Assembly: GCA_965235115.1 (NCBI GenBank)
Contig: OZ249447.1
Span: forward strand, 13,392,001-13,456,000
Direction: 5' to 3'
Length of the DNA stretch: 64,000 nucleotides
Source of the DNA: Laetmonice hystrix
Lineage: Eukaryota
The notes below the pieces were generated by a model. It was not told the origin of the DNA, ran no database searches, and saw nothing but the letters and a program-made list of their open reading frames with translations. The translations under genes were made by a program, and so were the position numbers. Below, in pieces: positions 44,148-49,086 of the stretch. Every line of letters starts with the position of its first letter. Position 1 is the first letter of the stretch.

Positions 44148-44233
44148 GTTGAGTGTGAACTGATCAACAAGTTGGACATCTTAGTGGGTGAGAACAAGGG
44201 AGACGACGAGTACAAACAACTCTTCAACACCAT
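44148..44233 (+). CDS. DOCK3/DOCK4: DOCK exon: VECELINKLDILVGENKGDDEYKQLFNT(M)
   Basis: gcgcag/gtgagt, 86 nt, phase 0 to 2. Confidence 0.96.
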
Positions 44234-44643
44234 GTGAGTTCACATCACTCAATCATAACCTAGGATACAGACAGTAGTAGGCTGACACATAGCCAGACTC
44301 GTGCACTGGTCTCTGTTCTCACGCTCTGGGTCCCTGTTCAGATATATAGGTCACCTCTATATTGGAAGAATGGTTTCTAAGTTCTTAAAAGAAAATAGAA
44401 TTCTGACTCAAAAACTGGACTTTACCTTAATTTGTACACTTTACCAATTGAGTACTATAGAATGATGTGGATCAAAGATCACAGTCTAAATCAAACCGTG
44501 ACTTAAGTTCTACTTATGCTTAAGCCTGCTGCTTGAGCTTCCTGCTTAGGACATAATCTGACTGTGTAAGTGGGTGCGTGTGGTAATAATGTGAACTGTG
44601 CCCCGCTGCAGCTCTCGACGCTTCCAGTCCATTGAGGAATGGT

Positions 44644-45142
44644 GCGTAAACACAGGCAGCTTAACAGTGTTTGTTAACTGGCACCTCATAGACACTGTTG
44701 TTAAACTGATCAATGTGTAAACACAGGCAGCTTAACAGTGTTTGTTAATTGGCACCTCATAGACACTGTTGTTAAACTGATCAATGTGTAAACACAGGCA
44801 TCTTAACAGTGTTTGTTAACTGGCACCTCCTAGACACTGTTGATAAACTGATCAATGTGTAAACACAGGCAGCTTAACAGTGTTTGTTAACCGCCACCTC
44901 ATAGACACTGTTGATAAACTGATCAATGTGTAAACACAGGCATCTTAACAGTGTTTGTTAACCGCCACCTCATAGACACTGTTGATAAACTGATCAATGT
45001 GTAAACACAGGCATTTTAACAGTGTTTGTTAATTGGCACCTCATAGACACTGTTGTTAAACTGATCAATGTGTAAACACAGGCAGCTTAACAGTGTTTGT
45101 TAACTGGCACCTCCTAGACACTGTTGATAAACTGATCAATGT
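44644..45142. repeat. 71-bp minisatellite x7
   Basis: GTGTAAACACAGGCAGCTTAACAGTGTTTGTTAACTGGCACCTCATAGACACTGTTGTTAAACTGATCAAT. Confidence 0.97.
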
Positions 45143-46219
45143 GACAATTTTCTACACATTGTTCACCACAAACCTCACGTTTTGTTGATCACGAGCAGTG
45201 AGTGTATGATTGAAAACAAGGACATCCATAATTCTGATTGTTTACACCACACTGCATATACAAACATCTTTATGCTTGCAACATCTGTGGTCATAAAGAT
45301 GACAACTTAGAGGAAAACAGTGGATTCTGTAATTCGTCCCTCACTATTATATGATAGGAATGATAGAGGTGATGTAACAGAAAAACTCTGACAGAAGTTG
45401 TGCACGTTTTGGTAACGTTCGTGTGGTATATATTGAAGTGATCGGGGATGGCTGAGGCAGTGTATGTGCACAGTTTACAATGATATCTGGTCTGGGAACC
45501 TCTGTGCAGACACCATCCCCTCCACCCAGCGTCTATCTTTGTCTCTCACTCCACCCCACTCAGTGGAGACTAAACCCTGTCACACTCCAACACGTATCAC
45601 TGAATCCCTTTACGGCTAGACTTGATGCGGAATCCGTGATGGAGTGTCAATTGTATATCTTTAATGAACCAGTAATATTAAGGAAATGTGTGTAGTAAAC
45701 AGTCAGAATGGGGAAATGTATTTAGTAAAGCAGTAACATATAGAGAGATTCGTTTAGTAAACCGATTTGGGAAGTATCGGGTTTCATCATGACAGGTTGA
45801 TGGTAAACGTTGCTGTGTGAAAAGCTCACCTCAGATGTTCAGTATGAGGGTCCAGTGTACAAGTGTACCTGTTGTGGAAACATGACCTGTGATCTTGGAG
45901 CAAACCTATACGTAGCAAACCCATGGAGCGATTTTATTTATGTTAAAAAAATGTCAGAACATTTTCATAATATTGTCTATTCATACGTCCACTGGAAAAA
46001 ACACATTTAAAATATGTGTCGTATTGAGATATTTTGGAATATCAATTTTTAATTCCATCCTCCAAGTTGTATACATTTGCTGGCAGAGGTTTGCTATCAC
46101 TGCATGTGGTGATCATGTTGAAGAGTGTGCTCTGACTGAGTGAGGAGACTGAGGTCTGACCTACTACTACTATACACCATGACTAACCCTCTCAATGCTC
46201 TTACCTTACTGACTTACAG

Positions 46220-46237
46220 GGAATACCTGAGCAACGT
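46220..46237 (+). CDS. DOCK3/DOCK4: Putative 18-nt microexon, inserts EYLSNV (FNTM-EYLSNV-LLVKVQ)
   Basis: gacttacag|GGAATACCTGAGCAACGT|gtaagt; phase 2-2, matching the host intron; TGACTAAC branch-like motif at 46180-46187, TGC at 46196, TGCATG at 46101 and 46247. Confidence 0.75.
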
Positions 46238-46282
46238 GTAAGTGTTTGCATGAACCTGACATGTGATCTCAGGATCCCTGGC

Positions 46283-46426
46283 TGCCCGGGACTCCGTGCC
46301 CGGTACTCCGTGCCCGGTACTCTGTGCCCGGTACTCTGTGCCCGGTACTCTGTGCCCGGTACTCTGTGCCCGGTACTCTGTGCCCGGTACTCCGTGCCCG
46401 GTACTCCGTGCCCGGTACTCCGTGCC
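46283..46426. repeat. 14-bp minisatellite (TGCCCGGTACTC(T/C)G), ~10 copies
   Basis: Read directly; explains the ORFs at 46214-46828. Confidence 0.95.
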
Positions 46427-48549
46427 TGTCACAGAGAATCCATGAATCCACAGATGAGTGGGATTCACGGATTGGGACACCAACTGACTTGGTGTTACTG
46501 GGACACGAGTTCCCGGCCAGCCTGGGGTCATGACACGTGTGTGTATCATTTTCCAAGCTGGATATGTTGTGTTTCATCATATTTCATTTACATCCTTCGT
46601 TTCAGTGTTCCTTTTATTTTCTTCTGTAAAAGTTCTTTCGTCTTTTTGTTGGTATTATTTGCTGTAAAATTTAGGACAAGAGGATATAATTTAGGACAAG
46701 AACCCGGTATATACCGGCAAGAGGGTTTAGATTCCCACAACCTGGCGTGTCAAAAAACACAGAATACGTGTGAGAGTGATCCGGCCGTGGGGGATTCGAT
46801 ATCTATATTCTTACCCCTGGAAGATTGAGAGTAGGGGTTTTTCCCTAAGTTCATCTGAATTATGACTGCCCAAAAAAAATTACTGTGAAATCGCAGCAAA
46901 ACCTCATTCCCCGTTACAAAAGTGCGAGTAAATGTAAATGTGCTCTTAATAGTTTGCTAAATGTACTCTTAATAGTTTGCTAAAAGAATTGAACAATTCA
47001 GAATAACAAAATAATCTCGACAAAGACGCCCTCTCCATGGGGACAAACGGAATCCGTCTTATTTCTTTCCTGTTCTTTTATTTGATTAGATTATCGCGAG
47101 ATCAAAGCATGTATCATAGTGATCATTTTAATCCCTTTTTTAGATTGTTTTGTTGGAGAGTTTTCGCTTGTTTATATATTACGTATTTAAATAAGCTTTT
47201 CTCGCCTTTAAGCGGAATTCTTGATTTTATTCCGCAATTTTTGCAGTCATGTAGCTCATAGTTTAGAACGTCCATCATTGATGTTGTCTTGTAATTTGTT
47301 AGTTGAGCTGTTTGTTGTTTCTGGGGTTTCCCTTGGACTCTGGCCTTATCTTAGTTGAGTACATGTATTCGATAAAATGCATGCATATTTGTTTTACTCT
47401 AGTATGATACATTTTGAATAACTAAAATATTCACTAAAATAAATCAAATAAATAAGCCCACACAATAATGAATTTACCGTATTGTGTAAATTACTGGGGG
47501 TAAGGGATACATACTCTCGTTGGTTTCCTCGTAAAACTCGAGTAGTGAACCTGTCCGACGCCAGGGGGCAGTAGTTGTATTGCTCAGCTCCCCTGCCGCC
47601 GTGTGGTCACTTGGAGATTGGGCCAGCCTAGCGTCGCAGTTATCCTGATTATCATGACCTGATGATTACAGACAATTGGCTGGCTCAGTATGACGTTACC
47701 ATGACAACTGGTCTCCTGCACACAACCAGTGACACAGGACAGTGTCGACTGTCATACTGATACATGGGTCCGAATTGTGGGCAGAACACAAAGGTCAACA
47801 TGACCTTCATGTACTAAATGGTTTCTTTATCGTTACCCCAATCAATACAGTGGTGGTGGTGGGGGGGGGGGGGTGAGGGTTAGATAATATGACCTAATAA
47901 CTAACTGAGGAATTTCTTTTCTGTGTAAATATTTGGTTGTGGAATTCTTGACATTAATTGTTGGGGATACACGTAGGCCCATATAGTTCACCTGACTCAA
48001 AAGTTTTATCCATGAAAAGTGTTAGGATAATTAACAAATAACGGTCAATATTGTTGTTGTGACATTGTCGTCAGGCCTGCCAGGTCTGGTGGTTTTGTGT
48101 TCTCACGACCCAAGTATCAACAATCAGTATAAATTTCCATGGAAAGCTTTAGATTTGATCACATCAACTCCTGCGGGATATTTTTGGCGATTCTCACATC
48201 TCAATCTTTTCCTATGTTTTTCTCCGTTTTTGTTATTTGCCTGAAGATCTTTTGTTACTTTTTGACGTTTTACATCAGTACACCCATTCATTATTATCTC
48301 CAACAAAAAAAACTCGAGTGCAGTAAGCTTGCTCATTGTGATATTATCCGGGACAGGTATTAGTCACAAACAAACAGACGACATTTTGAAGGAGCTTTAG
48401 TTTTCAGTGAAAACATCTAAAGTCCTGTTTCCGTTCAGATGGCCCAATAAAAACGTAGTACCCTTTCATCAGCTGTGGTTGGCTGCCTGTTGCTTACCAT
48501 GTCCCCGGCCACTGAGACCTATACCCCCTCTCCTAGCCTGATCCCATGG

Positions 48550-48550
<1 letters not shown>

Positions 48551-48583
<33 letters not shown>
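48551..48583. repeat. (CTG)11 trinucleotide repeat, intronic
   Basis: Read directly. Confidence 0.95.
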
Positions 48584-48585
<2 letters not shown>

Positions 48586-48987: not shown

Positions 48988-49086
48988 GTTACTGGTGAAG
49001 GTACAGTCGGAGCCAGGATGGCAGGAGAGTGGAATGGCATTCATACAGTCGGTCACCCGGCTCCTGGAGAGACTACTAGATTATAG
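48988..49086 (+). CDS. DOCK3/DOCK4: DOCK exon (DHR-2 start): LLVKVQSEPGWQESGMAFIQSVTRLLERLLDY(R)
   Basis: ttgtag/gtacgt, 99 nt, phase 2-2; SVTRL.ERLLDYR. Confidence 0.96.
   Translation, partial: VTGEGTVGARMAGEWNGIHTVGHPAPGETTRL

What the first reader, a model, noticed from the sequence alone, without database searches (positions are those of the whole stretch)
46101..46252. 18-nt microexon carrying the neural microexon splicing code, at the entry to DHR-2
Seen: perfect splice sites (ttacag|18 nt|gtaagt) and phase 2-2 matching the host intron, adding EYLSNV between FNTM and LLVKVQ. It has a TGACTAAC branch motif (46180-46187), a TGC 24 nt upstream of the exon, and TGCATG both upstream (46101) and 9 nt downstream (46247). 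Established: SRRM3/4 (the eMIC domain of bilaterian Srrm234) activates neural microexons through upstream UGC, and RBFOX binding to downstream UGCAUG promotes inclusion. From memory, unverified here: vertebrate DOCK3/DOCK4 carry an optional ~9-residue insert (..LFGPYPS) at this same junction. Inference: an ancient or convergent neural switch at the N-terminal edge of the GEF domain, invisible to ORF finders. This is the best candidate in the window for an undescribed regulatory feature.
Basis: partly seen in the sequence, partly recalled or inferred. Interest (0 to 1): 0.8.

Follow-up and report, generated by a model that had tools for sequence, protein, structure and literature searches.

The report
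Conserved 18-nt DOCK3/spg microexon
The 18-base segment very probably is a real exon: it matches a nerve-cell microexon already known in the fly DOCK3/4 gene sponge and annotated across arthropods, and finding it here and in a brachiopod suggests it is older than published work assumed.

Summary
The host gene is the DOCK3/4-type (fly sponge, spg) exchange factor of a non-mollusc lophotrochozoan.

- **Homology.** The 18-nt segment at 46220-46237 encodes EYLSNV. Arthropod DOCK3/spg isoforms carry a 6-residue cassette at exactly this junction and phase. It reads EHLSAV, EHLSTV or EHLSNV in most insects, crustaceans and spiders, EHLSLV in Drosophila, EHLQEV in a tick and EHLGSV in a millipede. Isoforms with and without it are annotated in the same species.
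- **Brachiopod copy.** The orthologous intron of Lingula holds an unannotated 18-nt copy (EYLSSA) between cag| and |gtaagt.
- **Chance.** Only 8 of 20,000 shuffled introns give a match this good.
- **Shared splice signals.** Window, Lingula, tick and fly all have a GTAAGT donor, a UGC 9-26 nt before the acceptor and a 48-120 nt AG-free zone. The genome encodes an SRRM eMIC exon.
- **Published function.** The fly exon is eMIC-dependent (PMC8797185) and neural-specific, with a knockout phenotype (bioRxiv 10.64898/2026.09.05.749416).
- **Not conserved.** The downstream TGCATG occurs only in the window.
- **Absences.** Molluscs, amphioxus and annotated hemichordate isoforms lack the exon.

No RNA data exist for this organism, so inclusion and tissue specificity remain inferred. 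Verdict: a new member of a known kind, probably of protostome-ancestral age.

The parts
44148..44233 (+). Upstream constitutive exon (86 nt), ..VECELINKLDILVGENKGDDEYKQLFNT + AT; donor gtgagt at 44234
   Evidence: sequence and tblastn to Lingula/tick DOCK3
46101..46106 (+). Upstream TGCATG (114 nt before the microexon)
   Evidence: not found in orthologs
46154..46217 (+). AG-exclusion zone of 64 nt before the acceptor AG
   Evidence: 48-120 nt in Lingula, tick and fly orthologs
46180..46187 (+). Branch-point-like TGACTAAC (CUAAC core starts 37 nt before the exon)
46196..46198 (+). UGC 24 nt upstream of the exon, the position class bound by SRRM eMIC factors
   Evidence: UGC at 9-26 nt in all four orthologs
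46214..46219 (+). 3' splice site ttacag
46220..46237 (+). 18-nt microexon GGAATACCTGAGCAACGT, adds EYLSNV
   Evidence: 5/6 identical to arthropod EHLSNV, 4/6 to Lingula EYLSSA; same junction and phase
46238..46243 (+). 5' splice site gtaagt
   Evidence: GTAAGT in all four orthologs
46247..46252 (+). Downstream TGCATG (RBFOX-type motif) 9 nt after the exon
   Evidence: present only in the window
48988..49086 (+). Downstream constitutive exon (99 nt), (G)LLVKVQSEPGWQESGMAFIQSVTRLLERLLDYR

Best explanation
46220-46237 is a genuine, evolutionarily conserved cassette microexon of the DOCK3/4-type (spg) gene of this lophotrochozoan. It is orthologous to the 18-nt microexon of Drosophila sponge and of arthropod DOCK3 genes.

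Shown here:
- Same intron, same phase and same length as the arthropod cassette.
- A homologous peptide, E[HY]LSx[VA].
- A shared GTAAGT donor, a UGC close to the acceptor and a long AG-free zone.
- An independent unannotated copy in Lingula.
- An eMIC-type SRRM exon encoded in this genome.

Inferred:
- In neurons the eMIC form of SRRM binds the UGC between branch point and acceptor and helps define the otherwise too-short exon. Elsewhere the exon is skipped.
- Inclusion adds six residues. A model of the tick ortholog places them inside a helix at the end of the TPR/ARM region, about 45 residues before the crystallised DHR-2 core. This would lengthen that helix by about 1.7 turns and so change how DHR-2 lobe A sits against the rest of the protein or its partners.
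- The TGCATG 9 nt downstream may add RBFOX-dependent enhancement in this lineage only.
For: - **Sequence and phase:**
- **Best splice-site pair in the intron:**
- **Gene identity:** DOCK3-like, placed in a lophotrochozoan clade with SH-aLRT 99.
- **Arthropod cassette:** 58 of the roughly 118 cluster representatives parsed, nearly all arthropod DOCK3/spg, carry the 6-aa insert at this junction. Forms with and without it are annotated in the same species, for example Tribolium, Bombus, Ornithodoros and Tetranychus.
- **Orthologous exons in DNA:** Lingula L001:40827-40844 (unannotated), tick L002:21146-21163 and D. ananassae L007:19468-19485.
- **Shuffle test:** 8 of 20,000.
- **Copy number:** single copy in the genome.
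- **eMIC exon:** PF15230 at 29.9 bits against a cut-off of 27, with the motif GSPSHLDRRRIT.
- **Position in the protein:** Pfam TPR_DOCK ends at residue 1165 and the insert is 1167-1172 in the tick protein. This maps to about DOCK2 1153-1156 in 6TGB, before the 3B13/2YIN constructs. An AF2 model puts the insert inside helix 117-140.
- **Literature:** the fly spg exon is eMIC-dependent and sits at the same position as a mouse Srrm3/4-regulated exon (PMC8797185). It is neural-specific, and its deletion impairs climbing and lifespan (bioRxiv 10.64898/2026.09.05.749416).
Against: - There is no RNA evidence for this organism. The only runs found are DNA contigs without joints.
- Molluscs lack the exon: no homolog in the Lottia intron and no insert in about 92 annotated isoforms. 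Presence is therefore patchy among lophotrochozoans.
- The nemertean Tubulanus has only a doubtful 12-nt candidate.
- The downstream TGCATG is not conserved.
- A UGC within 30 nt of the acceptor is expected by chance in about a third of sequences, so it supports eMIC control only modestly.
- The structural model has low local confidence at the insert (pLDDT 63-71).
Confidence: 0.8

Rival explanations
1. The exon is real and used, but it is not a neuron-restricted, eMIC-controlled switch in this animal. It could be constitutive, broadly alternative, or controlled by other factors such as RBFOX alone.
For: There are no tissue data here. The acceptor ttacag and donor gtaagt are strong, whereas fly eMIC exons are described as having very weak 3' splice sites (PMC8797185). 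A TGCATG lies 9 nt downstream.
Against: An 18-nt exon generally needs dedicated help to be defined. A UGC near the acceptor and a long AG-free zone are shared with the fly exon, which is eMIC-dependent. Arthropod annotations show both isoforms.
Confidence: 0.12
2. It is a relic: an ancestral microexon still recognisable in the intron but no longer spliced into mRNA in this lineage, as appears to have happened completely in molluscs.
For: The exon is lost in molluscs and amphioxus, and there are no RNA data.
Against: The reading frame, both consensus splice sites, the branch motif and the UGC are all intact after divergence deep enough that the rest of the intron is unalignable. No variant was seen in or next to the exon among three contig sets, while the intron 330-960 nt upstream carries 10 SNPs.
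Confidence: 0.05
3. It is a chance pair of splice-site-like motifs with no biological use.
For: Long introns do produce such pairs. The Lottia intron has one AG-18nt-GTAAGT.
Against: Peptide identity of 5/6 to the arthropod cassette at the same junction has a shuffle frequency of 4e-4. There is also an independent copy in Lingula.
Confidence: 0.03

Closest known systems
Drosophila sponge (spg) 18-nt neural microexon, eMIC-dependent (PMC8797185; bioRxiv 10.64898/2026.09.05.749416)
   Same: Orthologous gene, same intron, same phase 2, same 18-nt length. Peptide EHLSLV against EYLSNV, with 12 of 18 nucleotides identical to the D. ananassae exon. GTAAGT donor. UGC 22 nt (fly) against 24 nt (window) before the exon. 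Long AG-free zone.
   Different: The window has a strong acceptor (ttacag) where the fly has ataataaag. The flanking introns are kilobases long rather than 108 and 162 nt. The window has a downstream TGCATG that the fly lacks. Regulation and phenotype are untested here.
Annotated arthropod DOCK3 isoforms with MEHLSAV/MEHLSTV/MEHLSNV/MEHLQEV/MEHLKVV/MEHLGSV (NCBI models for spiders, ticks, mites, a millipede, crustaceans and insects)
   Same: A cassette of six residues at the identical junction, with both isoforms annotated.
   Different: Position 2 is Tyr here and in Lingula, but His (rarely Gln) in arthropods.
Vertebrate DOCK3/DOCK4 microexon (..[TI][QP]LFGPYPS..), Srrm3/4-regulated in mouse
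   Same: Same exon junction at the TPR-to-DHR-2 border. It is an optional insert and is reported as neural.
   Different: It has 9 residues (27 nt) and no sequence similarity. Amphioxus has a 320-nt intron with no exon here. Published work calls it convergent.
Lingula anatina DOCK3 (XP_013418248.1) intron copy, L001:40827-40844
   Same: 18 nt, same phase, EYLSSA, cag| and |gtaagt, UGC 9 nt upstream.
   Different: It is not in the annotated protein. The last residue is Ala (GC|G) instead of Val (GT|G). It has no CTRAY branch motif within 100 nt.

Membership tests
spg/DOCK3 junction microexon (protostome E[HY]LSx[VA] cassette) | Host gene is the DOCK-B (DOCK3/4/spg) ortholog | tested here: met
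   best matches are named DOCK3-like, and the tree places the window with DOCK3-like proteins, apart from the DOCK1/2 type.
spg/DOCK3 junction microexon (protostome E[HY]LSx[VA] cassette) | Lies in the intron between ..GDDEY[RK]xLFNT[MI] and LLx[KR]V.., phase 2, length 18 nt | tested here: met
spg/DOCK3 junction microexon (protostome E[HY]LSx[VA] cassette) | Encoded peptide is homologous to the cassette | tested here: met
   EYLSNV against EHLSNV is 5/6. Shuffle frequency is 8 of 20,000.
spg/DOCK3 junction microexon (protostome E[HY]LSx[VA] cassette) | Actually spliced into mRNA as an alternative exon | not testable with these tools
   No RNA runs exist for the organism. The laid runs are DNA contigs.
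eMIC (SRRM3/4, Srrm234)-dependent neural microexons | Exon of 27 nt or less with a UGC shortly upstream of the 3' splice site, a long AG-exclusion zone and a strong branch point | tested here: met
   UGC at -24, AG-free zone of 64 nt, CUAAC at -37. The criteria are as described in PMC8797185.
eMIC (SRRM3/4, Srrm234)-dependent neural microexons | Weak 3' splice site | tested here: inconclusive
   ttacag with 68% pyrimidines looks fairly strong. No calibrated splice-site score was available.
eMIC (SRRM3/4, Srrm234)-dependent neural microexons | Organism encodes the eMIC domain | tested here: met
   PF15230 match of 29.9 bits (cut-off 27) at G000:C18:20459758-20459838, reading ..RRRKGSPSHLDRRRITR.
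eMIC (SRRM3/4, Srrm234)-dependent neural microexons | Inclusion depends on the eMIC factor and is neural | not testable with these tools
   Known only for the fly ortholog (PMC8797185; bioRxiv 10.64898/2026.09.05.749416).
RBFOX-enhanced exons | (U)GCAUG in the downstream intron, conserved among orthologs | tested here: not met
   The motif is present 9 nt downstream in the window, with a chance of about 1%. It is absent within 200 nt downstream in Lingula, tick and fly.

The most novel reading that the evidence does not exclude
The DOCK3/spg 18-nt microexon dates back at least to the last common ancestor of arthropods and lophotrochozoans, with later loss in molluscs. That would make it one of very few neural microexons of that age. 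The 2026 preprint infers only two bilaterian-ancestral ones, in APBB1/2/3 and MADD. The 2022 fly paper favoured convergence for spg.

A bolder version is that the vertebrate DOCK3/4 27-nt exon at the same junction descends from it.

The probability given is for the protostome-ancestral version. For the vertebrate-homology version I estimate about 0.1-0.15.
Probability: 0.7. Interest if true: 0.6.

Novelty: new member of a known kind. Interest (0 to 1): 0.5.

Why it matters
Removing this microexon in flies shortens life and impairs climbing (bioRxiv 10.64898/2026.09.05.749416). Vertebrate DOCK3/DOCK4, which are linked to neurological disease, carry another microexon at the same spot.

A recognisably homologous copy in a lophotrochozoan genome and in a brachiopod, both invisible to ORF finders and missing from the Lingula annotation, has three consequences:
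- It moves the exon's origin from insects to the protostome ancestor.
- It gives a concrete case for testing how old the eMIC-controlled splicing programme's targets are.
- It shows that comparing peptides at fixed junctions can recover unannotated microexons without RNA data.

Tried and rejected
- **RNA evidence.** Two run searches, one with the long intronic stretch and one with a 270-nt exon, found only three DNA contig sets from one sample. Laying them showed no joints.
- **Nearest relative's locus.** P0001, an ENA contig, returned no DNA.
- **Loci that could not be fetched.** Haliotis has a gene range of 133 kb. Glandiceps, Ptychodera, Crassostrea angulata and C. virginica are not on record. 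Hemichordate and bivalve introns could therefore not be scanned; only their annotated isoforms were checked.
- **Repeat origin.** Rejected, because the region is single copy.
- **Inner 6-nt candidate.** 46232-46237 shares the donor but has a gAG acceptor without a pyrimidine tract, and was rejected.
- **Conserved RBFOX site.** Rejected.
- **Reference 46 of the preprint (GRB2 interaction).** It could not be identified in the held text, so that claim is only cited second-hand.
- **Earlier scan notes.** There were none near this place.

Full report
**Observation.** The letters are exactly as described.
- The acceptor ttacag ends at 46219. The 18-nt segment ggaatacctgagcaacgt occupies 46220-46237. 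The donor gtaagt follows at 46238-46243.
- The upstream exon (44148-44233) ends ..TTC AAC ACC AT|gtgagt. The downstream exon begins at 48988 with G TTA CTG GTG AAG GTA CAG. Both junctions split a codon after its second base. Inclusion gives FNTM-EYLSNV-LLVKVQ and skipping gives FNTM-LLVKVQ.
- TGACTAAC (46180-46187), TGC (46196-46198) and the two TGCATG (46101-46106, 46247-46252) are present.

**Is it more than chance?**
- The 4754-nt intron holds 171 frame-preserving, stop-free AG..GT segments of 3-51 nt. This one ranks first on a simple splice-site score and is the only GTAAGT donor paired with a YAG acceptor and a pyrimidine tract.
- That alone is weak evidence. The orthologous 9-kb intron of the limpet Lottia also holds one AG-18nt-GTAAGT, which has no similarity to anything.
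- The region is single copy in the 627-Mb assembly, so it is not part of a repeat. It sits between a 71-nt tandem array and a 14-nt minisatellite.

**What gene.** A 90-residue exon of the window retrieved DOCK proteins. The closest named full-length ones are 'dedicator of cytokinesis protein 3-like' from Lingula, ticks, amphioxus, a nemertean, abalone and an acorn worm. tblastn maps about 30 exons of this gene between 14.1 and 55.8 kb of the window. A maximum-likelihood tree places the window protein in a clade (SH-aLRT 99) with brachiopod, nemertean and mollusc DOCK3-like proteins. It falls outside the molluscs and apart from the DOCK1/2 type. The animal is therefore a non-mollusc lophotrochozoan, and the gene is the ortholog of fly sponge (spg) and vertebrate DOCK3/4.

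**The decisive comparison.**
- Isoform X1 of the tick Ornithodoros reads ..QLFNTM-EHLQEV-LLDRVK, where isoform X2 reads ..QLFNTI-LLDRVK.
- A search seeded with that region returned 120 cluster representatives, nearly all arthropod DOCK3/spg. Of the 118 whose junction could be parsed, 58 carry a six-residue insert at this junction.
- The insert reads MEHLSAV in termite, bees, wasps, beetles, crabs, crayfish and spiders, and MEHLSTV in planthopper and bark beetles. It reads MEHLSNV in the bug Nesidiocoris, MEHLSLV in Drosophila and Hermetia, MEHLGSV in a millipede, MEQLSAV in a mealybug and MEHLKVV in a spider mite.
- Both forms are annotated within single species, including Tribolium X1/X2, Bombus X1/X2, Eriocheir, Homarus, Ornithodoros and Tetranychus.
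- The window's EYLSNV is 5/6 identical to EHLSNV, at the same junction, in the same phase and of the same length.
- In 20,000 dinucleotide-preserving shuffles of the intron, only 8 produced any frame-preserving AG-18nt-GT with at least 5/6 identity to one of eight arthropod variants.

**Orthologous introns in DNA.**
- *Lingula anatina.* The annotated protein lacks the insert, but the intron holds ..aatgcaaacag|GGAGTATTTAAGTTCAGC|gtaagt at L001:40827-40844. This reads FNAV-EYLSSA-LLDKVQ in frame.
- *Tick.* The annotated exon is ..tctgctgcatccag|GGAGCACTTGCAAGAAGT|gtaagt.
- *Drosophila ananassae.* The exon is ..cattgcaacgccatccataataaag|GGAGCATCTGAGCTTGGT|gtaagt, and 12 of its 18 bases match the window.
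- *Shared features.* All four exons have a GTAAGT donor and a UGC 9-26 nt before the exon (window 24; Lingula 9; tick 9, 12 and 26; fly 22). Their AG-free zones are 64, 48, 120 and 100 nt.
- *Not shared.* GCATG within 200 nt downstream occurs only in the window.

**Where it is absent.**
- Amphioxus has a 320-nt intron with nothing comparable.
- Lottia has no homolog in its 9-kb intron.
- None of about 40 mollusc cluster representatives, or about 92 further mollusc isoforms, carries an insert at the junction. These cover Octopus, Mytilus, Magallana/Crassostrea, Mizuhopecten, Ruditapes, Dreissena, Haliotis and Mya.
- The annotated hemichordate isoforms also lack it.
- The nemertean Tubulanus has only a 12-nt candidate (ctcacag|GAAAATGTTGGT|gtaagt, KMLV) that is not in any of its 13 annotated isoforms.
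- Vertebrate DOCK3/4-like proteins carry a different, 9-residue insert (..[TI][QP]LFGPYPS) at the same junction. One trout isoform carries SVSVFS.

**What is known.**
- Torres-Méndez et al. 2022 (PMC8797185) list the spg exon among Drosophila eMIC-dependent exons. It is one of only four that share their position with a mouse Srrm3/4-regulated exon. They favoured convergence because the exon was not identified in all insects studied.
- They describe the eMIC code as long AG-exclusion zones, UGC close to the 3' splice site, long pyrimidine tracts and strong CUAAY branch points. The window fits this, with CUAAC at -37, UGC at -24 and a 64-nt AG-free zone.
- A 2026 preprint (10.64898/2026.09.05.749416) calls the spg exon an 18-nt neural-specific microexon conserved across insects. 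It occupies the equivalent intron position to the vertebrate DOCK3/4 microexon ('type I convergence'). Deleting it delays climbing and halves median lifespan.
- That preprint's bilaterian sample (amphioxus, sea urchin, centipede, octopus) did not lead it to claim conservation beyond insects.

**Trans factor.** The genome has an exon matching Pfam SRRM_C (PF15230) above the curated cut-off. It translates to ..RSPSIRRRKGSPSHLDRRRITR. This agrees with my recollection of the conserved core of the eMIC region, which I did not check against a reference sequence.

**Position in the protein.** In the tick isoform, Pfam TPR_DOCK ends at residue 1165 and the insert is 1167-1172. This maps to about residues 1153-1156 of DOCK2 in 6TGB, roughly 45 residues before the crystallised DHR-2 constructs begin. 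An AlphaFold2 model of tick residues 1040-1340 (mean pLDDT 85) places the six residues inside a continuous helix, model residues 117-140, with lower local confidence of 63-71. The most likely effect is a helix lengthened by about 1.7 turns at the hinge between the ARM/TPR array and lobe A of DHR-2. That is inference.

**What is missing.** No RNA run of this organism was found. The three holders are DNA contig sets from one sample and show no joints. They do show an 8-nt insertion allele behind 46164 and no substitutions between 45889 and 46832, against ten in the preceding 630 nt. This hints weakly at constraint. Inclusion, alternative use and neural restriction in this animal are therefore inferred from orthology and cis-architecture.

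**Verdict.** The segment is very probably a real microexon, orthologous to a known and functionally validated arthropod microexon. The kind is known. What is new is an unannotated lophotrochozoan member, a second one in Lingula, and with them evidence that the exon predates the arthropod-lophotrochozoan split and was lost in molluscs. The RBFOX element is lineage-specific at best.

Noticed in passing
L001:40827-40844 (Lingula anatina, GCA_001039355.2 LFEI02000001.1): An unannotated 18-nt in-frame microexon (EYLSSA), flanked by cag| and |gtaagt, lies in the DOCK3 intron. The NCBI model XP_013418248.1 lacks it.
   Followed up: yes
L003:18916-18927 (Tubulanus polymorphus): A 12-nt in-frame candidate (GAAAATGTTGGT, KMLV) sits between ctcacag| and |gtaagt in the orthologous intron. 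It is not in any of the 13 annotated isoforms. It could be a shortened derivative or chance.
   Followed up: partly
window 46283-46426, 44646-45143, 48551-48584: The microexon's host intron holds a 14-nt minisatellite (10 copies) starting 45 nt after the exon, a 71-nt tandem array (7 copies) and a (CTG)11 run.
   Followed up: no
window 46772-46938: Contig word depth jumps to 2,000-7,000x against about 50x around it, with loose ends at 46768-46816. This indicates a very high-copy repeat fragment in the downstream part of the intron.
   Followed up: no
window 46164: Two of three contig sets carry an 8-nt insertion (TACATTTG) 55 nt upstream of the microexon, just before the branch motif. No substitutions were seen at 45889-46832, against ten at 45257-45888.
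   Followed up: partly
G000:C18:20459758-20459838 (-), locus L008: An exon encodes ..RRRKGSPSHLDRRRITR and matches Pfam SRRM_C above the cut-off. It is the eMIC-type region of the SRRM234 ortholog of this genome.
   Followed up: partly
proteins P0102/P0178 against P0179 (Salmo trutta DOCK3): A trout isoform carries a 6-residue insert, SVSVFS, at the same junction where other vertebrate DOCK3/4 proteins carry the 9-residue ..LFGPYPS insert. This is a second vertebrate variant at the site.
   Followed up: no
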